Source of the DNA: Ostrea edulis
Taxonomy: Eukaryota
NCBI RefSeq assembly: GCF_947568905.1
Contig: NC_079168.1
Span: 32,736,001 to 32,800,000, forward strand
Direction: 5' to 3'
Length of the DNA stretch: 64,000 nt
This document shows, one piece after another, positions 16,023 to 59,340 of this stretch. Positions within the stretch are counted from its first letter, which is position 1, and each line of letters opens with the position of its first letter. The notes under the pieces were generated by a model. That model was not told the origin of the DNA and searched no databases. It worked only from the letters and a program-made list of their open reading frames with translations. Both the position numbers and the translations under genes were made by a program.

Positions 16023-16099
16023 TTATATGGGTGGTCTCTCAGACTCCAGCATGGTGGCGCTGTTGATGATTGCTGTGGTGGATATGATGAAGACGTAAC
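16023..16099 (-). CDS. VPS33B: VPS33B-like terminal coding exon, copy A (in-frame 6-nt deletion)
   Basis: ttgacAG|GT TAC GTC TTC... gives GYVFIISTTAIINSATMLESERPPI*, similar to the VPS33B C-terminus GYRFIFLTTAVTNSARLME. Confidence 0.8.
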
Positions 16100-16162
16100 C
16101 TGTCAACAGAGAAAATCGGTATTTTAGAACTGTAGTTAACTGTGACACGAAGGGAGAAAATG

Positions 16163-16237
16163 CAACGGACCAGACCGGGATTCAAATCCAGGCTCTTTAA
16201 ATCTCTGGTCAGGTGCTCTACAAACTGAGCTAGCTAA
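16163..16237 (-). mobile_element. tRNA-derived SINE head in the VPS33B-like last intron (copies ~24025, ~42477, ~50012, ~57825)
   Basis: Minus strand reads TAGCTCAGTTTGTAGAGCACCTGACC...GATTTGAATCCCGG (A box and degenerate B box). Confidence 0.65.
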
Positions 16238-16284
16238 CCTGTCTGACTCTCACAATACAAAGAAACTTTTCATTTACCCCTTAT

Positions 16285-16680
16285 GCAAACTAGATGTATC
16301 TGAGCGACATGAATAAGGACATGTCTAAGGGCCATAACTCTGTCAACAGTCATCCAACTGCCCCCATATACGTACTTGACAATGATGTATTTATATCCCA
16401 GATTTCAATTCAAAATGTCCCTGTATGATGGAGATAATGAATGGAAACTGAATTGTTAAAAACTTTTCAAAAGTCCAAGGGGTCCAACTTTTCCAATTTT
16501 AATCCACTAGAACAAAATACAAACTTGACCTGGATATTTTCAGGATGTAATCTATATACCAAATTTCATTTCAAAATATTCATGTATGACCAAAGTGATA
16601 AGCAGAGACTTTGAATTGTTTGAAATTTTCTTGACACAAGGGGCATAACGACAGGATGGAAATGGGTAACTATATATACA
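16285..16680. mobile_element. Old Helentron-like element with diverged internal repeats (copies ~24160, ~42600, ~50137, ~57950)
   Basis: aagggccataact / aacttgacct..gat repeat motifs typical of bivalve repeat-bearing non-autonomous elements. Classification by recognition only. Confidence 0.4.
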
Positions 16681-17551
16681 CACTAAAGTATATTATATAA
16701 TATGTATTGATTGTGGATCAGATCATCAAACGAAAGGGATGTGTCCTAATTCGCTCCCTAGAAAACATTGATTAGCAAGGCAGAACATGGTATTTGCAGG
16801 GTAAATAATTTTGTAGATTTAGTGTAGTTTTAGTGCTAGTGTTATTTGAGTGTCTTTAGCCATCTGATGAATTTAAAGAAAACACAATGTATGTTATATT
16901 ATTATTATTGTAAGTTATTTCATTTGTCCTGAGCAAGAGATGGGTCATTTCAAATACAGTAAAACACGGTTATAGCAAACCTTCAGGGCCAGCCAAAAAC
17001 AGTTCATTATAACCAAACTTCGTTATATCCAGTGAATTTTTCGTTATTTTCTTACCATAAGGGAATAGGTATTACTCCGCAATAAACGTTAATTCGTTAT
17101 AAACGTGTTTTACTGTACCTTAACTAATGTTTCAATGAACAGAAATCTCATCCATGTCTTAGAATAGAATTTCATCTGTAGTAACAAAACACAGTCTACT
17201 CTACTTATAATGAAGCCAACTATATTGAACTTACAGTTATATTGAAGTATAAATAAATCCCAAATAACATTATTTATATAGTTTAACATCGTTTATATTA
17301 AACTTTCAATATAATGAACACTTCAAGTTGTTCCCTGAATTTTAATTTATCTAGAGTAGACTGTATGCAAGACAAAATGCAAATGTACGTGTCAAACAAA
17401 CCAATCAATACCACAGTAATTACAAAGTAATCAGGATTTAGATCTCATATCAATTTATTACAGTTTACTAACAAAAATGCCAGGTTTAATCTGAAAGAAA
17501 TCTGTCTTTTTCATAAATGTGAGCTTTACAAATGTTAAAACTATTTCTCAC

Positions 17552-17662
17552 CTTGGAGTTTACCGAGGAATCGGAGGGCCGCTATTTCAGAGTGAGTACA
17601 ACCTCCCAAGAAATAGACGAGGACAACTTTACTGACCGGGCGATCTTGTCGTGCTGATTTAC
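17552..17662 (-). CDS. VPS33B: VPS33B-like penultimate coding exon, copy A
   Basis: 111 nt, phase 1-1, ttgacAG|...|GTGAG. Encodes KSARQDRPVSKVVLVYFLGGCTHSEIAALRFLGKLQG, containing the Sec1/Vps33 C-terminal motif FLGGCT.SEI.ALRFLG. Confidence 0.85.
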
Positions 17663-18104
17663 CTGTCAAGTCAATAACAAAATTATCACAAATCTACCAT
17701 GCCACAAGGAATACTAGTCCTAAGGAAATGTATTTTACATTTGTTTCTCTTGACAACTGTGCTTATTTTTATTTAGTATGGTTTACTGTAGACCTGGTAA
17801 TTCAGAAATACATTCCTTTTATAAAGAATTGCGATGTAAATGTTTTTCTCCTTTCAAGAATTTTCCCAAGAATGGAAATATTGACATTTTTATATTAGAT
17901 GAAATTTCTTCATCTACCTTAAAATCCAAAATTACAAGATACACAGTACCAAGGTATAACTGTTGCCAAGTTTGAACCTGGAAGATAGAATAATCAGTAA
18001 ATTTCAAATTTCCTATTTTTCATGTTATACAAAAATAATGAAAGTTGTGATATTGGAGCGAACACGCGAATATCGCATACATACAGTCATGTGACATACA
18101 TTTA

Positions 18105-19220: not shown

Positions 19221-19748
19221 ATGGCCACTGTCACTTCAAACACCCATTCTGATATGACGGTATGTTCTATTTGTTTGGAACGTTACAAATCACCAAGGTA
19301 TTTACTGTGCACACACACTTTCTGTCATCCGTGTCTACTGTCACACATCAAGTCGTCGTGTGCGCACTGCAGTCTACCGCTCGGATTTCCATGTCCACTG
19401 TGTAGAACGTTCGTCTTCGCGCCTGGTAATGTTGGCCAGTTCACTCCAGAAGAATGGGCTGACAGATTTCCAGAAAACCGATTTATGAGTTCCGTTACAA
19501 ATAAATGCGAGCCTTGTAACATTGATGGAGACGACAAACCTGCTAGTGGTTGGTGCAGAGACTGCTCCGAGGCTTTGTGCGAGGAGTGTCTTCAGTGGCA
19601 CAAAAAATTCAAACGTTCTAGAAATCATGAAATAGTTCCTTTCACTGAAGGCGCTATTCCTTCTACTTCTACCTCCTCACTAGACATGTGCGAGGATCAC
19701 GAGGGGCGAAAAATTGAAATGTTTTGTCACTTCAAACATCCATTGTGA
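19221..19748 (+). pseudogene. Truncated TRIM ORF (RING, B-box1, partial B-box2), 5' part of a frameshifted chimeric locus
   Basis: 175 aa; follows the 60916-type sequence to ...IEMFC, then reads out of frame HFKHPL* after the junction at 19727/19728. Confidence 0.85.
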
Positions 19749-21588
19749 TTTGACAGTCTGTTCTATTTATTTGGAACATTACAAATCACCAAGGTATTTA
19801 CCGTGCACACACACTTTCTGTCATCCGTGTCTACTGTCACACATCAAGTCGTCGTGTGCGGACTGCAGTCTACCGCTCGGATTTTCATGTCCGCTGTGTC
19901 GAACGTTCGTCTCCGCGCCTGGTAATGTTGGCCAGTTCACTCCAGAAGAATGGGCAGGCAGATTTCCAGAAAACCGATTTATGAGCTCTGTTGCAAATCA
20001 ATGCGAGCCTTGTGACATTGATGGAGACGACAAACCTGCTAGTGGTTGGTGCAGAGACTGCTCCGAGGCCTTGTGCGAGGAGTGTCTTCAGTGGCACAAA
20101 AAATTCAAACCTTCTAGAAATCATGAAATAGTTCCTCTCACTGAAGGGGCTATTCCTTCTACTTCTACCCCATTACTGGACATGTGCGAGGATCATGAGG
20201 GGCGAAAAATTGAAATGTTTTGTGAAAGTCATCTCGCACCATGTTGTGTCCTCTGTGTTACAACAGAACACGGTAAATGTAAAAGCATTTGTTCGATAGA
20301 GGAAGCGACCGATAAAGTAATAAAACCTGGGAAAGTAAAACGCTTGCGAGATGATGTCGATCGACTTGAAGTCATGTTAGAAAAGGTTATTACTGAAGAG
20401 AGAGCCAACATCCAAGAAATCGAAGATGTAGCCGACAAGTTAGGGGAAGAAATTTCGGGAGCGAAAGCAGCCATTATTGAAACTGTAACAAAGCTGGAAG
20501 AACAACATTTAAACGAAGTAGGAAAAGCAACCAAAGATGCTAAAGCAAAGCTTCAAAAATCAATCAACAATTTCGAACAGAGGCAATGTTATCTTCGCCA
20601 TTGGAAAGAAATATTCGGGAAAAATTTATTGACTGATGGGTCACTAAAAACAATTGTCGCATTGTCTTATACCAAAATGGAACGAATATTTCAAACTTTG
20701 AGAGAAATGGAAATGTCTCAGCTCAGATTTGGAATTCAAGCCAAGATACAAGATGACGTTAAGAAATTGATGAAGTTACCTTTGCTTGCAGAAATTACCA
20801 CAAATGAACAAAAAAGCCCTGTAATGCTAGATGAAATTGATATAGAAAATGCTGAAATCAACGTGATTTCTGAATTTACGATTGATGGTGCTAGTTTTAC
20901 AGGAGGGGTTTATCTCCAGAATGGGGAATTAGTACTGGCTGATAATATAAACAAGAAACTCGTTCACTGTAGAACAGATGGGGAGATTCTGAGAAAGATG
21001 CCTCTGCGAGGTTCTCCTTGGGATATTTGTGTCAACGAAGAAAATGATATTTATGTAACACTTCCAAAAAAAAAAGAAAAAGTTTTGGTTATTAGTATTG
21101 ATACATTCAACACAACAAAAACTGTTGAAGTTGATATTGAGTGCCGTGGAATAACACAGTCAGGCAACACTATTGCATTAGGTTCTATAAATGTTCTAGA
21201 AGTATTAAGTGCGGGTTTTCGAAAATGTAGGAGTTCAAGCGATGTAAAAGGATTGTACGATGTAGCAGTAGATATGGAAGAAAATATCATTTATTCGAGT
21301 TACTCCAAACACAAAGTCTGGAAACAGGACAGAGAAGGAAATGTCTTGTTCACATACAGTGATACAGAATTACAACATCCATACGGATTAACAGTGGACA
21401 GGATTGGGAATATATATTTGAATGGTAACAGCAGCAACAATATACACATACTCTCACAGACCGGTAAAAAGTTAAGAATTCTGAATGACGTGAGGGAGCC
21501 ACAATGTATTAAATTCCAGGAGAACACGCACAGATTCTTTGTCGGTGAGGCAGGGGGACGGGTGAAAATATTTGAATTTATTGCATGA
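19714..21588 (+). pseudogene. Downstream TRIM reading frame with no natural start (RING C->Y; first in-frame ATG at 19981 would give a RING-less protein)
   Basis: The track start at 19714 is TTG. Sequence resumes at nt 12 of a 34910-type CDS (CSIY, LGFS, PLLDM) and continues as 60916-type (ERAN, NNFEQ, ASFTGG, DNINKK). Confidence 0.8.
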
Positions 21589-23544: not shown

Positions 23545-23547
<3 letters not shown>

Positions 23548-23602: not shown

Positions 23603-23606
<4 letters not shown>

Positions 23607-26525: not shown

Positions 26526-26636
26526 CTTTGAGTTTACCGAGGAATCGGAGGGCCGTTATTTCAGAGTGAGTACAACCTCCCAAGAAATAGACGAGGACAA
26601 CTTTACTGACCGGGCGATCTTGTCGTGCTGATTTAC
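26526..26636 (-). CDS. VPS33B: VPS33B-like penultimate exon, copy B (its terminal exon is deleted)
   Basis: 111 nt, AG/GTAAG intact, encodes ...FLGGCTHSEITALRFLGKLKG; differs from copy E by 1 nt. Confidence 0.8.
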
Positions 26637-28312: not shown

Positions 28313-28964
28313 TATATGGAATATGCTGAAATTGTCAGGTGGTGTTCAATAATTTCTTCACGCAGCAGTTTTGAAAATTTGAAAATTATGGTTCCGTCCA
28401 CTGATGCATCTCCAGTTATTGTACACCGGTGTTTTATAGAAGGAAAACACCACAGCAATGGTACAAATATAAATACATATATCCATTTCTAGTATGATCT
28501 TAAAATATTATGCAATTTAAATCACACTAGAAATTTGACCTAAATAAACACATAGTGGTTATCACAGTATCGTGGCATTTATTTACACCTAAGGGTAACC
28601 CATGAAAGCTCACGTGCTTATTTCCAATGGTGAATGAACGAATTTTCTTATTAGCCGCTGGTTACTTCTAAACTGAGACATGCAAACATTGTATATGTCT
28701 CTTATATAAATATGCTGAAAACATTGAAAACGAAATTAGAATCTCGAGTATGCATATACAAGTATATACTGAATTAAATAGTAAAACCATCACATACAAT
28801 GATACATCGGTCAAATGGAATATTTTCACAATGGGCTCCTCGTCATCATGTTACATACAGCATAGTCCCATAAATGAGTCATCTTTTATTTATTTTACTA
28901 TATAATTAATTGAAAACCACCACTTTTCTAAATCCTTTTTATAAACTTATCAAGATTCAATTAT

Positions 28965-30930
28965 CTTCAATCTTCAATTATTCAATTACAGAGCTTTGCC
29001 TGTACATCATTGTTCCGGAACCCTCGCAAATAAATTTGGAGATTTTTTTCTCGGATAATATCCAAACCATCAGGGTAAACTTGTGCAATAACAACAGCAT
29101 GAATACTATAGATCCATTCTATGCTGATGTTCAATTTGATGCAGAACGGCTATGCAATTTCAGTTTAGTAACAGAATCTGAAGTTCGCATGATCATCTCA
29201 TCGGCTTCATTAAAATCATGTGAAATTGATCCAATCCCTACAACACTTCTGAAACCCATTTTAGAATCTGTGCTACCTATTTTTGCAGAAATAGTGAACA
29301 AATCTTTGAATGAATGTATATTTCCATCTTCCTTCAAAGAAGCCAATGTACGTCCGTTATTAAAGAAAGCAGGATTGGAGCCAGACTCGTTACGGAACTA
29401 CAGACCTGTCTCAAACCTCTCATTTCTTTCCAAAATTTTGGAAAGAGTGGTATCAGCTCGCATAGGGCACCATATAGATTCAAACAACCTAAATGACGTG
29501 GCCCAGTCTGCATATCGTCCTTGTCACTCAACAGAAACAGCTCTTCTAAGGGTACACCACGATATTGTGACAGCATTGCATAAAGGTTCTTGTGTTGCCT
29601 TGGTGATGCTAGATCTTTCAGCAGCTTTTGATGTTATAGACCATCAAATTCTCATTAAGCGACTGGAGGTATCATTTGGTATTACTGGTGCAGCACTTAC
29701 ATGGATCAAATCTTACTTAATTGGTCGTAGTCAGAAAGTGGTTGTAGGAACTGCAAAGTCTAAGGACTTTCTGCTTCCATATGGAGTGCCCCAAGGGTCA
29801 GTTCTGGGACCAAGACTTTATGCAATGTTTGCAAAACCGATTGGTGAAATCTGCCGCAGACATCATATCATGTATCATTGCTATGCTGACGATACCCAGG
29901 CATACTTAGTTTTTAGACCTACAGATACATGGAATGCTATCTCATCGCGGCTACAGGAATGCTTAGCAGATATAAAATCTTGGATGAACGTCAACCTGCT
30001 GAAATTAAACGAAGAAAAAACTGAATTTATAGTGTTTACTTCGAAACATTCAAACGTTTCACCATCTTTTCAACTGTCTTTTGGAAATACCACTGTTTCC
30101 AACTCGGACTGTGTTCGAAACCTTGGTGTTTTCTTCGACAGTGTACTTTCTTTTAAAAATCATATTAGTTCCATCTCTTGTTCTTGTTATTATCATCTAC
30201 GAAATATTGCACGGATTCGTTCTTTCATCAATGATGACGCCTGCAAGACACTTGTATGTTCTCTTGTGTTATCACGCTTAGACTATGGAAATGCACTATT
30301 TAAAGGGCTACCCCAAACAGATCTGAGCAGGCTACAGACAATCCAAAACTCAGCAGCTCGACTTGTTGCCCGGGTCAGAAAGCATGACCATATATCACTG
30401 CTGCTTGTGTCCTTGCACTGGCTTCCAGTTGATTCCCGTGTTGAATACAAGATTTTACTACACACATACAAGGCACTAAACGGATTGGCACCGGCCTATA
30501 TCATCGACCTCATCACTGTGTACGAACCAAAACGATCTCTGCGTTCATGCAATTCACGATTGCTAGAAAAAACCCGCGTTCGTACAAAGACCTATGAAGA
30601 TCGAAGGTTTGATGTAACAGCTGCCACACTATGGAACAGTTTACCGATAGACATCCGTTCGTGTGGCACTGTCAAAAGTTTTAAGACAAACCTCAAAACA
30701 TCTTTTTAGAAAATCTTATAACCATATTTTGTAATATATTCTTTTTTAAAGTAAAGGCTGGTTTGTCGCATGAACTCGTAATGTTTAAATTGTTTTATTT
30801 TATTTGGATGTTATATTTTATGCTCTGATTAATCTTATCATGTTTTACATTTTACATTTTTAAAGCGCTTAGAGTAATTACAAATTATATAATGCGCTAT
30901 ATAAATGCCGCACATTATTATTATTATTAT
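28965..30930 (+). mobile_element. 5'-truncated L2/CR1-like LINE with uninterrupted RT frame (stop at 30709)
   Basis: NYRPVSNLSFLSKILE, DLSAAFD, GVPQGSVLGP and YADD motifs; (att)n tail. Empty site caatta(t/g)agtaac at ~7125 and ~52482. Confidence 0.9.
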
Positions 30931-31247
30931 AGTAACCTTTACACCATTAACAACACTTGTAAATATCTACAGATTGTGGTTTCAGTGTCTTACCCACTTA
31001 CTAGTAACAACTGTACACATATTATATGAATGTAAGAACACCACACTCAAGGTTTTCAAAAGGTTATATAAAGAAATGGAATGCTAAAACTTAATGTTAA
31101 AGTTTCTTTGGTCATATTTCTGCAATTTAGTTGGTAAAAGAACTCAGAATGATTGTTCAAACAAAGGATATTTTTCAATTTAGCACAAAACATGAAAGTT
31201 GACTCATTTTATGGCACTACGCTGTACATTTACAGTCCCTATATTTT

Positions 31248-34909: not shown

Positions 34910-36775
34910 ATGGCCACTGTCACTTCAAACATCCATTGTGATTTGACAGTCTGTTCTATTTATTTGGAACATTACAAATCACCAAGGTATTTACCGTGCA
35001 CACACACTTTCTGTCATCCGTGTCTACTGTCACACATCAAGTCGTCGTGTGCGGACTGCAGTCTACCGCTCGGATTTTCATGTCCGCTGTGTCGAACGTT
35101 CGTCTCCGCGCCTGGTAATGTTGGCCAGTTCACTCCAGAAGAATGGGCAGGCAGATTTCCAGAAAACCGATTTATGAGCTCTGTTGCAAATCAATGCGAG
35201 CCTTGTGACATTGATGGAGACGACAAACCTGCTAGTGGTTGGTGCAGAGACTGCTCCGAGGCCTTGTGCGAGGAGTGTCTTCAGTGGCACAAAAAATTCA
35301 AACCTTCTAGAAATCATGAAATAGTTCCTCTCACTGAAGGGGCTATTCCTTCTACTTCTACCCCATTACTGGACATGTGCGAGGATCATGAGGGGCGAAA
35401 AATTGAAATGTTTTGTGAAAGTCATCTCGCACCATGTTGTGTCCTCTGTGTTACAACAGAACACGGTAAATGTAAAAGCATTTGTTCGATAGAGGAAGCG
35501 ACCGATAAAGTAATAAAACCTGGGAAAGTAAAACGCTTGCGAGATGATGTCGATCGACTTGAAGTCATGTTAGAAAAGGTTATTACTGAAGAGAAAGCCA
35601 ACATCCAAGATATCGAAGATGTAGCTGACAAGTTAGGGGAAGAAATTTCGGGAGCGAAAGCAGCCATTATTGAAACTGTAACAAAGCTGGAGGAACAACA
35701 TTTAAACGAAGTAGGAAAGGCAACTAAAGATGCTAAAGCAAAACTTCAAAAATCAATCAACACTTTCGAACAGAGGCAATGTTATCTTCGCCACTGGAAA
35801 GAAATACTCGGGAAAAATTTATTCACTGATGGGTCATCAAAAACAATTGTCGCATTGTCTTATACCAAAATGGAACGTATATTTCAAACTTTGAAAGAAA
35901 TGGAAATGTCTCAGCTCAGATTTGGAATTCAAGCCAAGATACAAGATGACGGTAAGAAATTGATGAAGTTACCTTTCCTTGCAGATATTACCACGAATGA
36001 ACACAAAAGCCCTGTAATGCTAGATGAAATTGATATAGAAAATGCTGAAATCAAAGCGATTTCTGAATTTACGATTGATGGTGCTGATTTTACAGGAGGG
36101 GTTTATCTCCAGAATGGGGAATTAGTACTGGCCGATAATAAAAACAAGAGACTTATTCACTGTAAAACAGATGGGGAGATTCTGAGAGAGGTGTCTCTGC
36201 AAGGTTCTCCATGGGACATTTGTGTCAACGAAGAAAATGATATTTATGTAACAATTCCTAAAGAAAAGAAAATTTTAGTAATTAGTATTGATACATTCAA
36301 CACAACAAAAACTGTTGAAGTTGATATTAAGTGCCATGGAATAGCACAGTCAGGCGACACTATAGCAATAGCTGGTTTAACTATTCTAGATATATTAAGC
36401 ACGGATTTTCGAAAATGTAGGAGTTTAAGGAATTTACAAGGTATGTACGATGTAGCAGTAGATATGGGGGAAAATATCATTTATTCGAGTGACACCACAC
36501 ACAATGTATGGAAACAAGACAGAGAAGGAAATGCCTTGTTCACATACAGAGATACAGAATTACAATATCCATATGGATTAACAGTGGACAGGGTTGGAAA
36601 TGTATATGTGAATGGTAACCTCAGCAACAATATACACATACTCTCACAGACTGGTAAAAAGTTAAGAATTCTTAATGACGTGAAGAAGCCACAGTGTATT
36701 AAATTCCAGAAGACGTACAGATTCTTTGTTGGTGAGGCAGGGGGACGGGTGAAAATATTTGAATTTGTTGTATGA
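34910..36775 (+). CDS. TRIM array member with RING Zn-ligand substitution (CSIY)
   Basis: 621-aa intact ATG ORF with all domains; second RING Cys is Tyr (TAT). Confidence 0.88.
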   Translation: MATVTSNIHCDLTVCSIYLEHYKSPRYLPCTHTFCHPCLLSHIKSSCADCSLPLGFSCPLCRTFVSAPGNVGQFTPEEWAGRFPENRFMSSVANQCEPCDIDGDDKPASGWCRDCSEALCEECLQWHKKFKPSRNHEIVPLTEGAIPSTSTPLLDMCEDHEGRKIEMFCESHLAPCCVLCVTTEHGKCKSICSIEEATDKVIKPGKVKRLRDDVDRLEVMLEKVITEEKANIQDIEDVADKLGEEISGAKAAIIETVTKLEEQHLNEVGKATKDAKAKLQKSINTFEQRQCYLRHWKEILGKNLFTDGSSKTIVALSYTKMERIFQTLKEMEMSQLRFGIQAKIQDDGKKLMKLPFLADITTNEHKSPVMLDEIDIENAEIKAISEFTIDGADFTGGVYLQNGELVLADNKNKRLIHCKTDGEILREVSLQGSPWDICVNEENDIYVTIPKEKKILVISIDTFNTTKTVEVDIKCHGIAQSGDTIAIAGLTILDILSTDFRKCRSLRNLQGMYDVAVDMGENIIYSSDTTHNVWKQDREGNALFTYRDTELQYPYGLTVDRVGNVYVNGNLSNNIHILSQTGKKLRILNDVKKPQCIKFQKTYRFFVGEAGGRVKIFEFVV

Positions 36776-38158: not shown

Positions 38159-38174
38159 TCTTCCTCTGTACAAA

Positions 38175-38476
38175 GAACCAACCATAGTAGTAACATGTAC
38201 TGATCAACCAACCATAGCAGTGACATTTACTGATCAACCAACCATAGCAGTAACATGTACTGATCAACCAACCATAGCAGTAACATGTACTGATCAACCA
38301 ACCATAGCAGTAACATGTACTGATCAACCAACCATAGCAGTAACATGTACTGATCAACCAACCATAGAAGTAACATGTACTGATCAACCAACCATAGCAG
38401 TAACATGTACTGATCAACCAACCATAGCAGTAACATGTACTGATCAACCAACCATAGCAGTAACATGTACTGATCA
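38175..38476. repeat. 30-bp minisatellite, ~10 copies
   Basis: Same unit as at 12256. Confidence 0.95.
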
Positions 38477-38633
38477 AGAAAACAATTTGTTGAAATATTC
38501 ATTACTTTATTACTGTGTTGTGCTGCTTGCACAGAATTTTTTAAAAAAATCACAAATTAAATTAAACCAAAAAACAGCCTGATTGACAGAGACCTACATT
38601 TCATACTTGAAGAAAAACAAATTACTCTATTAA

Positions 38634-42093: not shown

Positions 42094-42133
42094 TTAACTA
42101 CAGTTCTAAAATACCGATTTTCTCTGTTGACAG

Positions 42134-42216
42134 GTTACGTCTTCATCATAGCCACCACAGCAATCATCAACAGCGCCACCATCCTGGAGTCTGTCATGGA
42201 GAGACCACCCATATAA
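42134..42216 (+). pseudogene. VPS33B: VPS33B-like terminal exon, copy C, inverted relative to its partner exon
   Basis: ttgacAG|GTTACGTC...ATATAA on the + strand (GYVFIIATTAIINSATILESVMERPPI*), inside an inverted segment 42094-42455. Confidence 0.85.
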
Positions 42217-43868
42217 TTCATCGTCATATAGATTATCGTTTTATAGTTAATCATTTTTGTCATATAATTTATCATCGTCATTTAGACTGTTATTTTTGTC
42301 AGTAACTGTATTTAAAGGAAGTGAACATGAAAAAAATGTTTGTTGCATAATAAATTTAAAAGACCTCCTGAAACTGAATAGTGTGACCTAAATCTAATTT
42401 GCTTGTTCCTATTACGAGATTTGATCAATTAAACACTCTAAGTTAAAGGTTTATGTGACAAGAAGGGAGAAAATGCAACGGATCAGACCGGGATTCAAAT
42501 CCGGGCTCTTTAAATCTCTGGTCAGGTGCTCTACAAACTGAGCTAGCTAACCTGTCTGACTCTCACAATACAAAGAAACTTTTCATTTACCCCTTATGCA
42601 AACTAGATGTATCTGAGCGACATGAATAAGGACATGTCTAAGGGCCATAACTCTGTCAACAGTCATCCAACTGCCCCCATATACGTACTTGACAATGATG
42701 TATTTATATCCCAAATTTCAATTCAAAATTTCCCTGTATGATGGAGATAATGAATGGAAACTGAATTGTTAAAAACTTTTCAAAAGTCCAAGGGGTCCAA
42801 CTTTTCCAATTTTAATCCACTAGAACAAAATACAAACTTGACCTGGATATTTTCAGGATGTAATCTATATACCAAATTTCATTTCAAAATATTCATGTAT
42901 GACCAAAGTGATAAGCAGAGACTTTGAATTGTTTGAAATTTTCTTGACACAAGGGGCATAACGACAGGAAGGAAATGGGTAACTATATATACACACTAAA
43001 GTATATTATATAATATCTATTGATTGTGGATCAGATCATCAAACGAAAGGGATGTGTCCTAATTCGCTCCCTAGAAAACATTGATTAGCAAGCCAGAACA
43101 TGGTATTTGCAGGGTAAATAATTTTGTAGATTTAGTGTAGTTTTAGTGATAGTGTTATTTGAGTGTCTTTAGCCATCTGATGAATTTAAAGAAAACACAA
43201 TGTATGTTATATTATTATTATTGTAAGTTATTTCATTTGTCCTGAGCAAGAGATGGGTCATTTCAAATACAGTAAAACACGGTTATAGCAAACCTTCAGG
43301 GCCAGCCAAAAAACAGTTCATTATAACCAAACTTCGTTATATTCAGTGAATTTTTCGTTATTTTCTTACCATAAGGGAATAGGTATTACTCCGCAATAAA
43401 CGTTAATTCGTTATAAACGTGTTTTACTGTACCTTAACAAATGTTTCAATGAACAGAAATCTCATCCATGTCTTAGCAGAATAGAATTTCATCTGTAGTC
43501 ACAAAACACAGTCTACTCTACTTATAATGAAGCCAACTATATTGAACTTACAGTTATATTGAAGTATAAATAAATCCCAAATAACATTATTTATATATTT
43601 TAACATCGTTTATATTAAACTTTCGATATAATGAACACTTCAAGTTGTTCCCTGAATTTTGATTTATATAGAGTAGACTGTATGCAAGACAAAATACAAA
43701 TATACGTGTCAAACAAACCAATCAATGCCACAGTAATTACAAAGTAATCAGGATTTAGATCTCATATCAATTCATTAGAGTTTACTAACAAAAATGCCAG
43801 GTTTAATCTGAAAGAAATCTGTCTTTTTCATTAATGTGAGCTTTACAAATGCTAAAACTATTTCTCAC

Positions 43869-43979
43869 CTTTGAGTTTACCAAGGAATCGGAGGGCCGCT
43901 ATTTCAGAGTGAGTACAACCTCCCAAGAAATAGACGAGGACAACTTTACTGACCGGGCGATCTTGTCGTGCTGATTTAC
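43869..43979 (-). CDS. VPS33B: VPS33B-like penultimate exon, copy C
   Basis: 111 nt, AG/GTGAG intact, open frame. Confidence 0.8.
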
Positions 43980-45578: not shown

Positions 45579-47447
45579 ATGGCCACTGTCACTTCAAACA
45601 CCTATTGTGATATGACGGTATGTTCTATTTGTTTGGAACGGTACAAATCACCAAGGTATTTACCGTGCACACACACTTTCTGTCATCCGTGTCTACTGTC
45701 ACACATCAAGTCGTCGTGTACGGACTGCAGTCTACCGCTCGGATTTCCATGTCCACTGTGTAGAACGTTCGTCTCCGCGCCTGGTAATGTTGGCCAGTTC
45801 ACTCCAGAAGAATGGGCAGACAGATTTCCAGAAAACCGATTTATGAGTTCCGTTACAAATAAATACGAGCCTTGTGACATTGATGGAGACAACAAACCTG
45901 CTAGTGGTTGGTGCAGGGACTGCTCGGAGGCTTTGTGCGAGGAGTGTCTTCAGTGGCACAAAAAATTCAAACCTTCTAGAAATCATGAAATAGTTCCTCT
46001 CACTGAAGGGGCTATTCCTTCTACTTCTACCTCCTCACTGGACATGTGCGAGGATCACGAGGGGCGAAAAATTGAAATGTTTTGTGAAAGTCATCTCGCA
46101 CCATGTTGTGTCCTCTGTGTTACAACAGAACACGGTAAATGTAAAAGCATTTGTTTGATAGAGGAAGCGACCGATAAAGTAATAAAACCTGGGAAAGTAA
46201 AACTCTTGCGAGATGATGTCGATCGACTTGAAGTCATGTTAGAAAAGGTTATTACTGCAGAGAAAGCCAACATCCAAGAAATCGAAGATGTAGCCGACAA
46301 GTTACGGGAAGAAATTTCGGGAGCGAAAGCAGCCATTATTGAAACTGTAACAAAGCTGGAGGAACAACATTTAAACGAAGTAGGAAAAGCAACCAAAGAT
46401 GCTAAAGCAAAACTTCAAAAATCAATCAACACTTTCGAACAGAGGCAATGTTATCTTCGCCATTGGAAAGAAATACTCGGGAAAAATTTATTCACTGATG
46501 GGTCACCAAAAACAATTGTCGCATTGTCTTATACCAAAATGGAACGAATATTTCAAACTTTGAGAGAAATGGAAATGTCTCAGCTCAGATTTGGAATTCA
46601 AGCCAAGATACAAGATGACGTTAAGAAATTGATGAAGTTACCTTTGCTTGCAGAAATTACCACAAATGAACACAAAAGCCCTGTAATGCTAGATGAAATT
46701 GATATAGAAAATGCTGAAATCAACGCGATTTCTGAATTTACGATTGATGGTGCTAATTTTACAGGAGGGGTTTATCTCCAGAATGGGGAATTAGTACTGG
46801 CTGATCATAAAAACAAGAGACTCGTTCACTGTAGAACAGATGGGGAGATTCTGAGAAAGATGCCTCTGCAAGGTGCTCCATGGGATATTTGTGTCAACGA
46901 AGAAAATGATATTTATGTAACACTTTCTAGAGGAAAGAAAATTTTAGTTATTAGTATTGATGCATTCAACACGACAAAAACTGTTGAAGTTGATATTGAG
47001 TGCCGTGGAATAGCACAGTCAGGCAACACTATTGCAGTAGGTTGTATAAATGTTCTAGACGTATTAAGTGCGGATTTTCGAAAATGTAGGAGTTCAAGCG
47101 ATGTAAAAGGATTGTACGATGTAGCAGTAGATATGGAGGAAAATATCATTTATTCGAGTTACACCAAACACAAAGTCTGGAAACAGGACAGAGAAGGAAA
47201 TGTCTTGTTCACATACAGTGATACAGAATTACAACATCCATATGGATTAACAGTGAACAGGATTGGGAATATATATGTGAATGGTAAAGGCAGCAACAAT
47301 ATACACATACTCTCACAGACCGGTAAAAAGTTAAGAATTCTGAATGACGTGAGGGAGCCACAATGTATTAAATTCCAGGAGAACACGCACAGATTCTTTG
47401 TCGGTGAGGCACGGGGACGGGTGAAAATATTTGAATTTATTGCATGA
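45579..47447 (+). CDS. TRIM array member (B-box1 first Cys->Tyr)
   Basis: 622-aa ATG ORF; RING intact; NKYEPC instead of NKCEPC. Confidence 0.92.
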   Translation: MATVTSNTYCDMTVCSICLERYKSPRYLPCTHTFCHPCLLSHIKSSCTDCSLPLGFPCPLCRTFVSAPGNVGQFTPEEWADRFPENRFMSSVTNKYEPCDIDGDNKPASGWCRDCSEALCEECLQWHKKFKPSRNHEIVPLTEGAIPSTSTSSLDMCEDHEGRKIEMFCESHLAPCCVLCVTTEHGKCKSICLIEEATDKVIKPGKVKLLRDDVDRLEVMLEKVITAEKANIQEIEDVADKLREEISGAKAAIIETVTKLEEQHLNEVGKATKDAKAKLQKSINTFEQRQCYLRHWKEILGKNLFTDGSPKTIVALSYTKMERIFQTLREMEMSQLRFGIQAKIQDDVKKLMKLPLLAEITTNEHKSPVMLDEIDIENAEINAISEFTIDGANFTGGVYLQNGELVLADHKNKRLVHCRTDGEILRKMPLQGAPWDICVNEENDIYVTLSRGKKILVISIDAFNTTKTVEVDIECRGIAQSGNTIAVGCINVLDVLSADFRKCRSSSDVKGLYDVAVDMEENIIYSSYTKHKVWKQDREGNVLFTYSDTELQHPYGLTVNRIGNIYVNGKGSNNIHILSQTGKKLRILNDVREPQCIKFQENTHRFFVGEARGRVKIFEFIA

Positions 47448-49840: not shown

Positions 49841-49923
49841 TTATATGGGTGGTCTCTCCATGACGGACTCCAGCATGGTGACGCTGTTGATGATTGCTGT
49901 GGTGGCTATGATAAAGACGTAAC
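49841..49923 (-). CDS. VPS33B: VPS33B-like terminal exon, copy D
   Basis: 83 nt, AG acceptor, GYVFIIATTAIINSVTMLESVMERPPI*; minus-strand AATAAA at 49365-49370. Confidence 0.82.
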
Positions 49924-51446: not shown

Positions 51447-51557
51447 CTTTGAGTTTACCAAGGAATCGGAGGGCCGCTATTTCAGAGTGAGTACAACCTC
51501 CCAAGAAATAGACGAGGACAACTTTACTGACCGGGCGATCTTGTCGTGCTGATTTAC
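51447..51557 (-). CDS. VPS33B: VPS33B-like penultimate exon, copy D
   Basis: 111 nt, AG/GTGAG intact, open frame. Confidence 0.82.
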
Positions 51558-53157: not shown

Positions 53158-55038
53158 ATGATTTACGACGTTATGGCCACTGTCACTTCAAACATCCATT
53201 GTGATTTGACGGTATGTTCTATTTGTTTGGAACATTACAAATCACCAAGGTATTTACCGTGCACACACACTTTCTGTCATCCGTGTCTACTGTCACACAT
53301 CAAGTCGTCGTGTGCGGACTGCAGTCTACCGCTCGGATTTCCATGCCCGCTGTGTAGAACATTCGTCTCCGCGCCTGGTAATGTTGGCCAGTTCACTCCA
53401 GAAGAATGGGCAGACAGATTTCCAGAAAACCAATTCATGAGTTCCGTTGCAAATCAATGCGAGCCTTGTGACATTGGTGGAGACAACAAACCTGCTAGTG
53501 GTTGGTGCAGAGACTGCTCGGAGGCTTTGTGCGAGGAGTGTCTTCAGTGGCACAAAAAATTCAAACGTTCCAGAAATCATGAAATAGTTCCTCTCACTGA
53601 AGGGGCTATTCCTTCTACTTCTACCCCATCACTGGACATGTGCGAGGATCACGAGGGGCGAAAAATTGAAATGTTTTGTGAAAGTCATCTCGCACCATGT
53701 TGTGTCCTCTGTGTTACAACAGAACATGGTAGATGTAAAAGCATTTGTTCGATAGAGGAAGCGACCGATAAAGTAATAAAACCTGGGAAAGTAAAACGCT
53801 TGCGAGATGATGTCGATCGACTTGAAGTCATGTTAGAAAAGGTTATTACTGCAGAGAAAGCCAACATCCAAGAAATTGAAGATGTAGCTAACAAGTTAGG
53901 AGAAGAAATTTCGAGAGCAAAAGCAGCCATTATTGAAACTGTAACAAAGCTGGAGGAACAACATTTAAACGAAGTAGGAAAAGCAACCAAAGATGCTAAA
54001 GCAAAACTTCAAAAATCAATCAACACTTTCGAACAGAGGGAATGTTATCTTCGCCATTGGAAAGAAATACTCGGGAAAAATTTATTCACTGATGGGTCAC
54101 CAAAAACAATTGTCGCATTGTCTTATACCAAAATGGAACGAATATTTCAAACTTTGAGAGAAATGGAAATGTCTCAGCTCAGATTTGGAATTCAAGCCAA
54201 GATACAAGATGACGTTAAGAAATTGATGAAGTTACCTTTGCTTGCAGAAATTACCACAAATGAACACAAAAGCCCTGTAATGCTAGATGAAATTGATATA
54301 GAAAATGCTGAAATCAACGCGATTTCTGAATTTACGATTGATGGTGCTAATTTTACAGGAGGGGTTTATCTCCAGAATGGGGAATTAGTACTGGCTGATC
54401 ATAAAAACAAGAGACTCGTTCACTGTAGAACAGATGGGGAGATTCTGAGAAAGATACCTCTGAAAGGTTCTCCATGGGATATTTGTGTCAACGAAGAAAA
54501 TGATATGTATGTAACACTTCCTAAAAAAAAGAAAGTTTTAGTTATTAGTATTGATACATTCAACACAACAAAAACTGTTGAAGTTGATATTGAGTGCCGT
54601 GGAATAGCACAGTCAGGCAACACTATTGCATTAGGTTGTATAAATGTTCTAGAAGTATTAAGTGCGGATTTTCGAAAATGTAGTTCAAGCGATGTAACAG
54701 GATTGTACGATGTAGCAGTAGATATGGAGGAAAATATCATTTATTCGAGTTACACCAAACATAAAGTCTGGAAACAGGACAGAGAAGGAAATGTCTTGTT
54801 CACATACAGAGATACAGAATTACAATATCCATATGGATTAACAGTGGACAGGGTTGGAAATATATATGTGAATGGTAAAAGCAGCAACAATATACACATA
54901 CTCTCACAGACTGGTAAAAAGTTAAGAATTCTGAATGACGTGAGGGAGCCACAGTGTATTAAATTCCAGGAGAACACGCACAGATTCTTTGTTGGTGAGG
55001 CAGGGGAACGGGTGAAAATATTTGAATTTGTTGTATGA
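53158..55038 (+). CDS. TRIM array member (start at 53158 or at the paralog-equivalent ATG 53173)
   Basis: 626-aa ORF with all Zn ligands intact and a 3-nt deletion in the propeller (CSSSDV). Confidence 0.92.
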   Translation: MIYDVMATVTSNIHCDLTVCSICLEHYKSPRYLPCTHTFCHPCLLSHIKSSCADCSLPLGFPCPLCRTFVSAPGNVGQFTPEEWADRFPENQFMSSVANQCEPCDIGGDNKPASGWCRDCSEALCEECLQWHKKFKRSRNHEIVPLTEGAIPSTSTPSLDMCEDHEGRKIEMFCESHLAPCCVLCVTTEHGRCKSICSIEEATDKVIKPGKVKRLRDDVDRLEVMLEKVITAEKANIQEIEDVANKLGEEISRAKAAIIETVTKLEEQHLNEVGKATKDAKAKLQKSINTFEQRECYLRHWKEILGKNLFTDGSPKTIVALSYTKMERIFQTLREMEMSQLRFGIQAKIQDDVKKLMKLPLLAEITTNEHKSPVMLDEIDIENAEINAISEFTIDGANFTGGVYLQNGELVLADHKNKRLVHCRTDGEILRKIPLKGSPWDICVNEENDMYVTLPKKKKVLVISIDTFNTTKTVEVDIECRGIAQSGNTIALGCINVLEVLSADFRKCSSSDVTGLYDVAVDMEENIIYSSYTKHKVWKQDREGNVLFTYRDTELQYPYGLTVDRVGNIYVNGKSSNNIHILSQTGKKLRILNDVREPQCIKFQENTHRFFVGEAGERVKIFEFVV

Positions 55039-55723: not shown

Positions 55724-56462
55724 CAGGGATGGGGTAATTGAAAAATGTAATTGTAATTTGCTGTATTTAAATACATTTTTATAAAGCAATTGGATATATT
55801 TGTAATTGACTTTGCTTTCAATTACAAGTAATTGAATGTATTTAAATACATTTTATAAAAAGTCAAGTATTTTAAATTATATTTTTAATTCAAACTGAAA
55901 ATGATGGAATGAAAGTGTCTGATAATAATGGTGTTAGACTGATCTACTGTTTGTCATAGGATGTTTATGCAATAATTAGATGTCTCCCTATGTCTATAAA
56001 CTTGATGCAGTGTGGCCACAGTGCCCAGGGCTATAGGTGAAGGGCTAATTGTGTTCAGGTGTTCACCCCTCTCATACCTGCAGTACAAAGACACAAGTAA
56101 AAAAAAAAAATACCCGAGCAGGAGTTCACTTCATTCAGATAATTTAGAACTAAACATGACTTTTAAATGTACTGGATGAATTTGATGTCCTAGAAAATGC
56201 ATCTGGAAATAGCCATTTTTTAGCAGAATTTTAATCCCTCAAAAGGCTTGAAGACAAATCATAGCAGGCTTCGCGGTCAAGTCTTCCAAGACATTTTGAA
56301 ATAAACTTAAGTAATTGAAATGTATTTAATTATATTCTTCAAAGTAATTTAGAGTAATTAAATACATTGATTAAAATCATTGTAATTGCAAGTAATTGAC
56401 AAAATCATCAATATAATTTAAAGTATTTAATTACATTTTCAATGTAATTGACCCCATCCCTG
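55724..56462. mobile_element. hAT-like MITE copy
   Basis: tcttcctc TSD on both sides, CAGGGATGGGG TIR. Confidence 0.8.
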
Positions 56463-56479
56463 TCTTCCTCTGTACAAAG

Positions 56480-56810
56480 AACCAACCATAGCAGTGACAT
56501 TTACTGATCAACCAACCATAGCAGTGACATTTACTGATCAACCAACCATAGCAGTAATGTGTACTGATCAACCAACCATAGCAGTGACATTTACTGATCA
56601 ACCAACCATAGCAGTGACATTTACTGATCAACCAACCATAGCAGTAACATGTACTGATCAACCAACCATAGCAGTAACATTTACTGATCAACCAACCATA
56701 GCAGTGACATTTACTGATCAACCAACCATAGCAGTAACATGTACCGATCAACCAACCATAGCAGTAACATTTACTGATCAACCAACCATAGCAGTGACAT
56801 TTACTGATCA
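56480..56810. repeat. 30-bp minisatellite, ~11 copies
   Basis: Same unit as at 12256, with g/a and t/g variants. Confidence 0.95.
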
Positions 56811-57679
56811 AGAAAACAATTTGTTGAAATATTCATTACTTTCTTACTGTGTTGTGCTGCTTGCACAGAATTTTGAAAAATTTCACAAATTAAATTAAAC
56901 CAAAAAACAGCCTGATTGACAGAGACCTACATTTCACACTTGAAGAAAAACAAATTACTCTATTAACAAACAAATTACTACATCTACAATAGATGGTAAG
57001 CTTATAATGATAATTTATGAGCCCTTACTTTCATATTTCAATTAATTGCATCATAGGGCCACATTCTAGAACAAAATAAGAAGTGTACATGCAGGCACAC
57101 AGCCTGGAGTATATTCAGAGGGGTGAGTGAATCCTTTGGATTTCCCATAATGGTTGTCATTTTTGGAAATGTTAAAGGATTTGATCCCTAACTATATGAA
57201 ATAAGAGCTCTGATTGTGGGTAAAAATAAATACCCCAATATCATAACTACTAAAGATAAATAAAAATAATTAATTTTCCAATAATTTTTATTGGATAGCA
57301 TTAAACAATTTTTAATGCAGTGTGTGAATGCACCCCTCTGCTTAAAAGGGTTTGTGCTATTCTCTCTCTCTCTCTCTTGCACTCTCTTTCTGAATGTTTT
57401 TCCAATCGGAGTCTAATTTTTCAGTCTCACAGTACCAATATATTAAACTCCCCATCCAAATGAATCGTGAAGTCACTTAACTGCAGATGATCGAGTGAGT
57501 GACTACCAGTCACAATGGTTCAGTGTAATTATTGATATTGCTCAGCGCTTCAACTCAAACGAAGTCACTTACAATCTATACAGTTTAAATACAGTTACTG
57601 ACAAAAATAAGTCTAAATGACGATGATAAAGTATGACAAAAATTATTAACTATAAAACGATAATCTATATGACGATGAA

Positions 57680-57762
57680 TTATATGGGTGGTCTCTCCAT
57701 GACAGACTCCAGCATGGTGGCGCTGTTGATGATTGCTGTGGTGGCTATGATGAATACGTAAC
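57680..57762 (-). CDS. VPS33B: VPS33B-like terminal exon, copy E
   Basis: 83 nt, GYVFIIATTAIINSATMLESVMERPPI*; minus-strand AATAAA at 57287-57292. Confidence 0.85.
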
Positions 57763-59229
57763 CTGTCAACAGAGAAAATTGGTATTTTAGAACTGTAGTT
57801 AACTGTGACAAGAAGGGAGAAAATGCAACGGACCAGACCGGGATTCAAATCCGGGCTCTTTAAATCTCTGGTCAGGTGCTCTATAAACTGAGCTAGCTAA
57901 CCTGTCTGACTCTCACAATACAAAGAAACTTTTCATTTAACCCTTATGCAAACTATAGATGTATCTGACTCTGAGCGACATGAATAAGGGCATGTCTAAG
58001 GGCCATAACTCTGTCAACAATCATCCAACTGCCCCCATATACGTACTTGACAATGATGTATTTATATCCCAAATTTCAATTCAAAATATCCCTGTATGAC
58101 GGAGATAATGAATGGAAACTGAATTGTTAAAAACTTTTCAAAAGTCCAAGGGGTCCAACTTTTCCAATTTTAATCCACTAGAACAAAATACAAACTTGAT
58201 CTGGATATTTTCAGGATGTAATCTATATACTAAATTTCATTTCAAAATATTCATGTATGACCAAAGTGATAAGCAGAGACTTTGAATTGTTCGAAATTTT
58301 CTTGACACAAGGGGCATAACGACAGGATGGAAATGGGTAACTATATATACACACTAAAGTATATTATATAATATGTATTGATTGTGGATCAGATCATCAA
58401 ACGAAAGGGATGTGTCCTAATTCGCTCCCTAGAAAACATTGATTAGCAAGGCAGAACATGGTATTTGCAGGGTAAATAATTTTGTAGATTTAGTGTAGTT
58501 TTAGTGCTAGTGTTATTTGTGTGTCTTTAGTCATCTGATGAATTTAAAGAAAACACAATGTATGTTATATTATTATTATTGTATTATCTTATTTCATTTG
58601 TCCTGAGCAAGAGACGGGTCATTTCAAATACAGTAAAACACCGTTATAGCAAACCTTCAGGGCCAGCCAAAAAACAGTTCATTATAACCAAACTTCGTTA
58701 TATCCAGTGAATTTTTCGTTATTTTCTTACCATAAGGGAATAGGTATTACTCCGCAATAAACGTGAATTCGTTATAAACGTGTTTTACTGTACCTTAACA
58801 AATGTTTCAATGAACAGAAATCTCATCCATGACTTAGCAGAATAGAATTTCATCTGTAGTCACAAAACACAGTCTACTCTACTTATAATGAAGCCAACTA
58901 TATTGAACTTACAGTTATATTGAAGTATAAATAAATCCCAAATAACATTATATATATAGTTTAACATCGTTTATATTAAACTTTCGATATAATGAACACT
59001 TCAAGTTGTTGCCTGAATTTTAATTTATCTAGAGTAGACTGTATGCAAGACAAAATACAAATGTACGTGTCAAACGAACCAATCAATGCCACAGTAATTA
59101 CAAAGTAATCAGGATTTAGATCTCATATCAATTCATTACAGTTTACTAACAAAAATGCCAGGTTTAATCTGAAAGAAATCTGTCTTTTTCATGAATGTGA
59201 GCTTTAGAAATGTTAAAACTATTTCTCAC

Positions 59230-59340
59230 CTTTGAGTTTACCGAGGAATCGGAGGGCCGTTATTTCAGAGTGAGTACAACCTCCCAAGAAATAGACGAGA
59301 ACAACTTTACTGACCGGGCGATCTTGTCGTGCTGATTTAC
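59230..59340 (-). CDS. VPS33B: VPS33B-like penultimate exon, copy E
   Basis: 111 nt, AG/GTGAG; visible in the ORF track at 59219..59452 as KVVLVYFLGGCTHSEITALRFLGKLKG. Confidence 0.85.

What the first reader, a model, noticed from the sequence alone, without database searches (positions are those of the whole stretch)
16023..59340. Hidden minus-strand array of VPS33B-like 3'-terminal exon cassettes interleaved with TRIM genes
Seen: five copies of a 111-nt phase 1-1 exon (17552, 26526, 43869, 51447, 59230), all with intact AG/GT and no stops. There are also four copies of an 83-nt terminal exon (16023 with an in-frame 6-nt deletion, 42134 inverted, 49841, 57680) and a conserved minus-strand AATAAA downstream. 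Spliced, they give ...KVVLVYFLGGCTHSEI(A/T)ALRFLGKL(K/Q)GYVFIIATTAIINSATMLESVMERPPI*. Known: this matches the C-terminus of VPS33B, the Sec1/Munc18 protein of endolysosomal trafficking complexes. Inference: the body of the gene lies to the right of the window. The copies could act as alternative 3' ends giving VPS33B C-terminal variants, or they could be passengers of the TRIM expansion. Copies B and E differ by 1 nt in 111 while their flanking introns carry many indels. My count of exon changes is about 5 synonymous and 5 non-synonymous, too few to prove selection.
Basis: partly seen in the sequence, partly recalled or inferred. Interest (0 to 1): 0.85.

Follow-up and report, generated by a model that had tools for sequence, protein, structure and literature searches.

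The report
Duplicated VPS33B tail exons among TRIM genes
In the flat oyster, repeated tandem copying of an immune-type TRIM gene dragged the last two exons of the neighbouring trafficking gene VPS33B along, leaving mostly idle exon copies kept alike by copy-to-copy sequence exchange, not a proven set of alternative protein ends.

Summary
Five copies of a 111-nt exon and four of the terminal exon lie at the stated coordinates. Spliced, they give the exact C-terminus of Ostrea edulis VPS33B (Sec1 family). However, the native exon pair (G) and one more 111-nt copy (F) also lie outside the window, so there are seven and five copies in all.

The copies are passengers. Each sits in a 7.6-9 kb tandem unit built around an opposite-strand TRIM gene. 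Homology to the native intron starts only 390-430 nt upstream of the 111-nt exon.

That exon is far less diverged than distant flanks (1.5% against 11-13%). Third codon positions and adjacent intron are equally conserved, and recombination breakpoints cluster there. Between oyster genera the same positions vary freely. This points to gene conversion, not coding selection.

Terminal exons are lost (B, F), inverted (C) or carry a 6-nt deletion (A).

Public RefSeq models already include a Thr-variant isoform reaching cassette E. The RNA I could lay did not assign transcripts to a copy. One small RNA contig suggests the inverted exon is spliced in frame onto a TRIM transcript.

I found no paper on this, and the scan had not noted it before.

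The parts
59230..59340 (-). 111-nt penultimate VPS33B exon, copy E (Thr variant; has a synonymous T at exon position 41 seen in no other copy)
   Evidence: its translation equals RefSeq isoforms X2/X4; an RNA contig matches it at 115/115 nt
57680..57762 (-). 83-nt terminal exon with stop, copy E; identical to the native terminal exon G outside the window
   Evidence: the recorded VPS33B gene range ends here (L001 53049)
51447..51557 (-). 111-nt exon, copy D (Ala variant; identical to C)
49841..49923 (-). terminal exon, copy D: four changes from G/E, one of them Ala to Val
43869..43979 (-). 111-nt exon, copy C (Ala variant)
42094..42455 (+). 362-bp inverted segment of unit C. It carries the terminal exon (42134-42216, Met to Ile) with its acceptor and 3' UTR on the plus strand
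   Evidence: 42094-42455 matches 16139-15784 in reverse at 97%, and 42454-42800 matches 16141-16487 forward;
26526..26636 (-). 111-nt exon, copy B (Thr variant, gtaaga donor; identical to the outside copy F). No terminal exon follows
17552..17662 (-). 111-nt exon, copy A (Ala variant, Lys to Gln at the last codon)
16023..16099 (-). terminal exon, copy A: 77 nt, in-frame loss of Val-Met, plus Ala to Ser
59341..59730 (-). the part of unit E still homologous to the native VPS33B intron; the duplication junction lies about 390 nt upstream of the exon
   Evidence: G upstream aligns to E, D and F only over the last 390-430 nt
60916..62784 (+). single-exon TRIM gene (622 aa; RING and B-box domains, weak NHL match) of the unit that holds cassette E. 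It lies inside the annotated VPS33B gene range
53158..55038 (+). TRIM gene between cassettes E and D
45579..47447 (+). TRIM gene between cassettes D and C
34910..36775 (+). TRIM gene upstream (plus strand) of the inverted terminal exon. It is the only paralogue with a G|GTAAGA donor, at 35951/35952
19221..21588 (+). TRIM locus between cassettes B and A, with an internal 5' duplication (the subject of a separate first-reader note)
7773..9638 (+). last TRIM gene of the closely related series. Its unit starts at 6751 and holds no VPS33B exon

Best explanation
The exon copies are by-products of the tandem expansion of a TRIM gene that originally lay tail to tail just downstream of VPS33B in Ostrea edulis.

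The duplicated unit is 7.6-9 kb. It runs from about 400 nt upstream of VPS33B's penultimate exon, through the terminal exon and the opposite-strand TRIM gene, to about 1.2 kb upstream of the TRIM start codon. Each round of duplication therefore carried the last two VPS33B exons along. The native pair (G) and one more copy (F) lie right of the window. E, D, C, B and A are successively more distal copies inside it.

Unequal crossing-over and gene conversion between units then kept a roughly 290-nt island around the 111-nt exon nearly identical in all copies. The rest of each unit drifted and the terminal exons decayed.

Most copies are probably not used to make VPS33B protein. Only the nearest cassette (E, possibly with F's exon) is a candidate for a minor read-through 3' end, and it would change a single residue (Ala591Thr).

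Shown: the copies, their unit boundaries, the mosaic pattern, the decay, and the single cassette in two other oyster genera. Inferred: that conversion, not selection, keeps the exon alike, and that distal copies are silent.
For: Location and extent:
- L001 from O. edulis chromosome OX387708.1 overlaps the window exactly.
- VPS33B exons for residues 1-553 lie at L001 10001-24501. The native pair lies at about L001 29411-31093, and F's 111-nt exon at 42410-42520.
- TBLASTN with nine VPS33B proteins finds only the last two exons in the window.

Unit structure:
- Self-alignment shows 7.6-9 kb units containing the TRIM genes.
- Homology to the native intron starts 390-430 nt upstream of the exon.

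Other oysters:
- Saccostrea cucullata has one cassette followed by opposite-strand TRIM genes. Crassostrea virginica has one cassette, and no TRIM match in the 10 kb fetched after it.
- Magallana gigas has separate partial VPS33B duplications starting at about residues 291 and 490, again with TRIM genes between them.

Conservation island:
- Mean divergence among the four old lineages is 1.5% in the exon, 3.1% at -110..-1, 5.4% at +1..+65 and 10.6-13.5% further out.
- Variable columns: 4/111 in the exon against 144/625 in far flanks (Fisher 1e-7). Third codon positions 2/36 (p 0.012). Proximal intron 10/157 (p 5e-7).
- Between genera the same exon has 14-25 synonymous codon differences out of 36, at most 3 non-synonymous, and the flanking introns show no evident similarity in the alignment.

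Recombination: 709 of 3003 informative site pairs fail the four-gamete test. Copies D, E and G change partner groups between -124 and +170.

Decay: no terminal exon in B or F, a 362-bp inversion in C, a 6-nt deletion in A, and non-synonymous changes in A, C and D.

Young pair E/A: exon divergence of 3/111 is at or above the flank divergence of 1.8%.
Against: - All seven 111-nt copies keep their frame and both splice sites.
- RefSeq isoforms X2/X4 carry the Thr variant that the reference has only in F, E and B, and the recorded gene range ends at E's terminal exon. Some read-through use of E is therefore modelled publicly.
- An mRNA contig in run X1 matches exon E at 115/115 nt, including its private synonymous T.
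- Conversion and nucleotide-level selection cannot be fully separated with seven copies from one haplotype.
- The RNA evidence consisted of assembled contigs from other individuals. It cannot show that distal copies are silent.
Confidence: 0.7

Rival explanations
1. The copies are working alternative last-exon cassettes. VPS33B transcription reads past the native poly(A) site and through the antisense TRIM genes. The third-from-last exon then splices to one of several downstream exon pairs, giving C-terminal variants (Ala/Thr, Lys/Gln, Ala/Val, loss of Val-Met).
For: All 111-nt copies are intact with identical splice-site contexts. The exon plus about 100 nt of proximal intron is conserved, a pattern also seen around regulated alternative exons. 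RefSeq X2/X4 carry the Thr variant and the recorded gene range reaches E's terminal exon. A spliced mRNA contig carries E's exact exon.
Against: Only E, D and A have a usable terminal exon, and A's is damaged. The variants differ by only one or two residues. Third positions and introns are conserved as much as coding positions, whereas between genera they are free to vary. The cassette array is absent from the 10 kb fetched downstream of VPS33B in S. cucullata and C. virginica. The mRNA contig's terminal exon and UTR do not match cassette E, so its E-like exon probably sits at the native position in another haplotype.
Confidence: 0.17
2. The cassettes are transcribed on their own as short spliced, polyadenylated non-coding RNAs running divergently from each TRIM promoter. 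In this case they matter, if at all, for TRIM regulation and not for VPS33B.
For: Each exon pair lies head to head with a TRIM gene, about 1.6 kb from its start codon. M. gigas databases hold a 66-residue model made of just these two exons (P0330). An RNA-library contig lies on E's 3' region without any VPS33B body (run X2).
Against: No transcript start was observed. The X2 contig may be an ordinary VPS33B 3' UTR or DNA carry-over. Contigs cannot show starts or strand.
Confidence: 0.08
3. The array is an assembly artefact, for example haplotypes laid in tandem.
For: The two-unit blocks F-E and B-A are 97-98.6% identical, which is within the range of oyster heterozygosity.
Against: The window has no gaps. 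The blocks are separated by 35 kb of distinct units and retroelement insertions. Units differ by up to 13%. Contigs of a separate public run of unrecorded type (X5, most likely DNA) cover the stretch and show both variants at exon position 82.
Confidence: 0.03

Closest known systems
Partial gene copies carried as passengers in tandem segmental duplications, kept alike by gene conversion (concerted evolution of tandem arrays)
   Same: The copy boundaries follow the duplication unit and not the gene. Only the 3' end is copied. Units are mosaics with many four-gamete failures. Some copies are truncated, inverted or deleted.
   Different: The copies lie downstream on the same strand as the intact parent gene. 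They keep perfect splice sites, so they sit where read-through transcripts could use them. Public gene models already do so for one of them.
Tandemly duplicated alternative or mutually exclusive exons
   Same: Repeated homologous exons in one orientation within one annotated gene range, with the same phase and length.
   Different: Those exon sets are old, differ in protein sequence, and in the well-studied cases are conserved between species (from general knowledge, not tested here). Here the copies are nearly identical and separated by whole genes on the other strand. They are missing in two other oyster genera and are conserved at silent sites too.
RefSeq gene models XP_056021791-XP_056021794 (O. 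edulis VPS33B-like isoforms X1-X4)
   Same: X2/X4 end in exactly the peptide encoded by cassette E. X1/X3 end in the peptide of the native pair G.
   Different: The models distinguish only the Ala/Thr pair and a 10-residue optional segment. They neither show nor explain the other five 111-nt copies.
Magallana gigas VPS33B locus (L002)
   Same: Partial VPS33B copies alternate with opposite-strand TRIM genes downstream of the intact gene. Public models include a 952-residue product and many isoforms.
   Different: The duplicated part is much longer, starting from about residue 291 or 490. The breakpoints differ, so the events look independent.

Membership tests
VPS33B (Sec1/Munc18 family), C-terminal coding exons | Sequence match to the C-terminal end of the Sec1 domain | tested here: met
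   Pfam PF00995, E 4e-13, profile 522-575 of 575. Human VPS33A structure 4bx9, E 1.8e-9 over residues 541-595.
VPS33B (Sec1/Munc18 family), C-terminal coding exons | Closer to VPS33B than to VPS33A | tested here: met
   All the full-length hits whose names I looked up are called VPS33B: lamprey, tick, Lingula. The O. edulis protein is 50% identical over its full length to Lingula VPS33B. It scores 314 bits against human VPS33A. This rests on source names and scores; no tree was built.
VPS33B (Sec1/Munc18 family), C-terminal coding exons | Lies on the same strand downstream of the gene body and is joined to it in mRNA | tested here: inconclusive
   Same strand and order are shown. A spliced contig joins the upstream exon to an E-identical exon, but its 3' part is not E-like. 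No copy-specific assignment was possible.
Alternative last-exon or mutually exclusive exon array | Intact splice sites and compatible phase in every copy | tested here: met
   Met for all seven 111-nt copies. For the terminal exon only G, E, D and A qualify; it is lost in B and F and inverted in C.
Alternative last-exon or mutually exclusive exon array | Transcripts that use different copies | tested here: inconclusive
   RefSeq isoforms differ at Ala/Thr. The laid contigs come from other individuals and mix copy marks.
Alternative last-exon or mutually exclusive exon array | Protein-level constraint on the copies (deficit of non-synonymous relative to synonymous change) | tested here: not met
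   Five synonymous against five non-synonymous changes, plus one in-frame deletion. Third positions are as conserved as the rest (2/36 variable against 23% in far flanks).
Alternative last-exon or mutually exclusive exon array | Array shared by related species | tested here: not met
   S. cucullata and C. virginica have one cassette within the 10 kb fetched downstream. M. gigas has duplications with other boundaries.
Passenger gene fragment of a tandem duplication | Copy ends coincide with the ends of the duplication unit | tested here: met
   Homology to the native intron begins 390-430 nt upstream of the exon. Units include the TRIM gene.
Passenger gene fragment of a tandem duplication | Exon divergence equal to flank divergence | tested here: not met
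   Not met for the 111-nt exon in old pairs (1-2% against 9-12%). This is explained here by conversion. It is met for young pairs (E/A/C) and roughly met for the terminal exon.

The most novel reading that the evidence does not exclude
The array is a real, lineage-specific set of alternative 3' cassettes. VPS33B transcripts read through antisense TRIM genes to reach them, so 3'-end choice and TRIM expression interfere with each other. In addition, the inverted copy has been captured as an in-frame last exon of a TRIM transcript, giving a TRIM protein with a VPS33B tail. Partial VPS33B copies have arisen next to TRIM genes in two oyster lineages, probably independently.
Probability: 0.12. Interest if true: 0.6.

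Novelty: new member of a known kind. Interest (0 to 1): 0.33.

Why it matters
- It is a clean example of how a fast-expanding immune-type gene family (TRIM) can scatter splice-competent pieces of an essential neighbouring gene.
- It shows how gene conversion can make such pieces look selected.
- It warns annotators and RNA-seq users that the Ala/Thr 'isoforms' of oyster VPS33B may be mapping effects of allelic variation among near-identical exon copies.
- If the TRIM-to-VPS33B-tail splice is real, it would be a small case of exon capture after inversion.
- None of this changes what is known about VPS33B function.

Tried and rejected
- Further VPS33B exons in the window: none found with nine query proteins.
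- Contig behind the 93-residue model P0003 (92% identical to the exon peptide): not on record.
- Short O. edulis transcript-derived VPS33B fragments that might carry copy-specific residues: none found.
- Isoforms X2 and X3, and the 621-residue TRIM at 34910: not on record. I therefore could not tell whether the recorded range 10001-53049 belongs to isoform X1 or to the whole gene.
- Earlier scan notes on VPS33 or Sec1: none.
- Papers on VPS33B in oysters: one unrelated review. The O. edulis genome paper mentions TRIM proteins only among genes up-regulated in infected oysters.
- tRNA search over the array: nothing.
- Protein-level selection as the cause of exon conservation: rejected, because silent positions and adjacent intron are conserved too.
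- Assembly artefact: rejected (see rival explanations).
- My global alignment of the terminal-exon regions misplaced some exon columns. For that exon I rely on direct comparison.
Full report
**1. Observation**

Reading the minus strand at 15900-17800 shows the first exon pair exactly as described. BLASTN of that pair against the window finds five copies of the 111-nt exon at 17552, 26526, 43869, 51447 and 59230, at 97.3-100% identity. It finds four copies of the terminal exon: A, D and E on the minus strand and C on the plus strand. Printing each copy with its borders shows an AG acceptor, a GT donor, phase 1-1 and no stop in all five. Terminal exon A has a 6-nt in-frame loss. The window has no N.

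**2. What the exons are**

- The spliced 63-residue peptide matches the last 54 positions of Pfam Sec1 (E 4e-13).
- It matches residues 541-595 of human VPS33A (E 1.8e-9).
- A full scan of 1.84 billion representative proteins gives 493 hits. All the full-length hits whose names I looked up are called VPS33B: lamprey, tick, Lingula.
- A TRIM ORF of the window identifies the chromosome: it is 100% identical to a protein on a 94,306,699-bp contig.
- Lingula VPS33B finds 'VPS33B-like isoform X1 [Ostrea edulis]' on that same contig.

**3. Where the gene is**

The locus of that protein (L001, OX387708.1 32783680-32846728, reversed) overlaps the window base for base. The mapping is L001 = 110729 minus window coordinate.

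- Exons for residues 1-553 lie at L001 10001-24501, which is 22-37 kb beyond the window's right end.
- A native penultimate exon (G, 29411-29521) and terminal exon (about 31011-31093) follow.
- Then come a TRIM gene, another 111-nt exon without a terminal exon (F, 42410-42520), the TRIM gene at window 60916, and cassette E.
- In the window itself nine VPS33B proteins hit nothing but the two last exons.

The window, however, holds only the distal five of seven copies.

**4. Public models**

The four RefSeq isoforms differ by an optional 10-residue segment and by Ala or Thr at residue 591.

- Ala is encoded by G, D, C and A. Thr is encoded by F, E and B.
- The recorded range ends at L001 53049, which is window 57680, the stop of cassette E.
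- A Thr isoform must therefore use F or E plus E's terminal exon.
- Only X1 is on record in the position index, so I cannot say whether that range belongs to X1 or to the gene as a whole.

**5. Origin**

Self-alignment shows tandem units of 7.6-9 kb at 84-98% identity. Each holds a plus-strand single-exon TRIM gene with RING, B-box and a weak NHL match.

- Homology of the units to the native VPS33B intron begins only 390-430 nt upstream of the 111-nt exon.
- In Saccostrea cucullata the single cassette is followed by opposite-strand TRIM genes.
- Crassostrea virginica has one cassette, and no TRIM match in the 10 kb fetched after it.
- Magallana gigas has its own partial VPS33B duplications, starting at about residues 291 and 490, again alternating with TRIM genes.

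The simplest history is tail-to-tail neighbours, then tandem duplication of a unit whose edge fell inside VPS33B's second-to-last intron.

Later events within the window:
- a two-unit block duplication (F-E to B-A, 97-98.6%);
- two reverse-transcriptase insertions;
- a 362-bp inversion in unit C;
- a 6-nt deletion in A.

**6. Is the exon under selection?**

Pairwise, the 111-nt exon differs at 0-3 sites, while flanks differ by 1.4-12%. Among the four old lineages (G, F, E, D) mean divergence is:

| Region | Divergence |
|---|---|
| exon | 1.5% |
| -110..-1 | 3.1% |
| +1..+65 | 5.4% |
| farther out | 10.6-13.5% |

Variable columns are 4/111 in the exon against 144/625 in far flanks (Fisher 1e-7). 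Third codon positions (2/36, p 0.012) and proximal intron (10/157, p 5e-7) are low as well.

Between oyster genera the same exon shows 14-25 synonymous codon differences out of 36, at most three non-synonymous, and flanking introns with no evident similarity in the alignment. The native exon therefore has strong protein constraint and no silent-site or intron constraint. The island in the O. edulis copies has the opposite signature.

The alignment is also a mosaic:
- 709 of 3003 informative site pairs fail the four-gamete test.
- D groups with E/C/A upstream and with F/B downstream.
- E carries an F/B-type patch from -79 to +80.
- G changes partners across the exon.

I conclude that repeated conversion or crossing-over centred on the exon explains the conservation. 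This is an inference. Seven copies of one haplotype cannot exclude some selection.

The terminal exon shows no such excess conservation: 2-4 differences in 77-83 nt against about 4-8% in its flanks. It also collects Ala to Ser, Ala to Val, Met to Ile and the Val-Met loss.

In the young pair E/A the exon differs at 3/111 against 1.8% in the flanks.

**7. RNA**

Only assembled contigs of small runs were available.

Run X1:
- It is labelled RNA by guess, and comes from another individual or label.
- A 1875-nt contig joins the upstream exon (its loose end equals L001 24471-24500) to a 111-nt exon identical to E over 115 nt. The match includes E's private T at position 41.
- Through a GT..AG intron at the predicted sites it continues into a terminal exon.
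- That terminal exon has two synonymous differences from E/G, and its UTR is of the D/A/C type.
- The contig is thus a mosaic of copy marks. It most simply comes from a haplotype whose native exon carries the E-type letters.

Run X5, of unrecorded type but most likely genomic DNA, has no contig with E's T at position 41. Copy-specific SNPs of the reference are therefore unsafe markers. The RefSeq Thr isoform could be such an allelic effect.

**8. A side finding: a possible TRIM-VPS33B chimera**

In RNA run X3 a 195-nt contig (depth 5) matches the inverted terminal exon and its UTR. Every difference from E is the one expected for copy C. At the exact acceptor it continues into 21 letters that match, with two mismatches, a site inside all six closely related TRIM ORFs of the window.

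Only the TRIM at 34910-36775, the one upstream of the inverted exon on the plus strand, has G|GTAAGA at that point; the others have GTTAAG. The contig has the extra G that this donor predicts. Splicing 35951 to 42134 is in frame. It would give 347 TRIM residues, then Gly, then 26 residues of VPS33B tail.

This rests on one small contig, and the two mismatches are unexplained.

**9. Verdict**

The VPS33B identity and gene position are right.

The copies are passengers of the TRIM expansion, homogenised by conversion. Use as alternative VPS33B ends remains unproven. At most it is plausible for the nearest cassette, where it would change one residue.

The kind of event is well known.

Noticed in passing
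window 34910-36775 and 42134-42216; junction 35951/35952 to 42133/42134: An RNA-library contig (run X3, 195 nt, depth 5) joins TRIM coding sequence to the inverted VPS33B terminal exon at its acceptor. Only this TRIM paralogue has a G|GTAAGA donor there. The fusion is in frame (374 residues). Two of the 21 TRIM letters do not match the reference.
   Followed up: partly
window 28910-30709 and 39083-40579 (+): Two ORFs with reverse-transcriptase domains (RVT_1, E about 1e-30). These retroelement insertions lengthen the spacing between cassettes B and C.
   Followed up: partly
window 42094-42455: A 362-bp segment is inverted in place relative to unit A (15784-16139). One breakpoint abuts a tRNA-like repeat in the intron. 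Homology to the other units stops at 42094.
   Followed up: partly
window 57770-57917 and 58584-58731; also about 16140-16250: Short interspersed repeats lie in the intron between the two exons. One looks tRNA-derived, but ARAGORN calls no tRNA. Contig depth there is hundreds of times that of neighbouring bins in both DNA and RNA runs.
   Followed up: no
all 111-nt copies, e.g. window 59261-59263; L001 29411-29521: All seven O. edulis copies encode His in the motif GGCT-x-SEI. The other oysters and animals examined have Tyr, and human VPS33A has Phe.
   Followed up: no
L002 (Magallana gigas OY970750.1) 22101-42821: M. gigas has three 111-nt exon copies and repeated blocks of VPS33B exons (from about residues 291 and 490) alternating with opposite-strand TRIM genes. 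Public models include a 952-residue VPS33B and fragments of 66-227 residues.
   Followed up: partly
window 19221-21588: The TRIM locus has a duplicated 5' part: 19229-19727 is 94% identical to 19725-20223, and residues 1-169 occur twice. It is the subject of a separate first-reader note.
   Followed up: partly
window 772-2694 (+): A more distant TRIM paralogue (48% protein identity to the others) sits at the left edge of the array, beyond the last unit of the closely related series.
   Followed up: no
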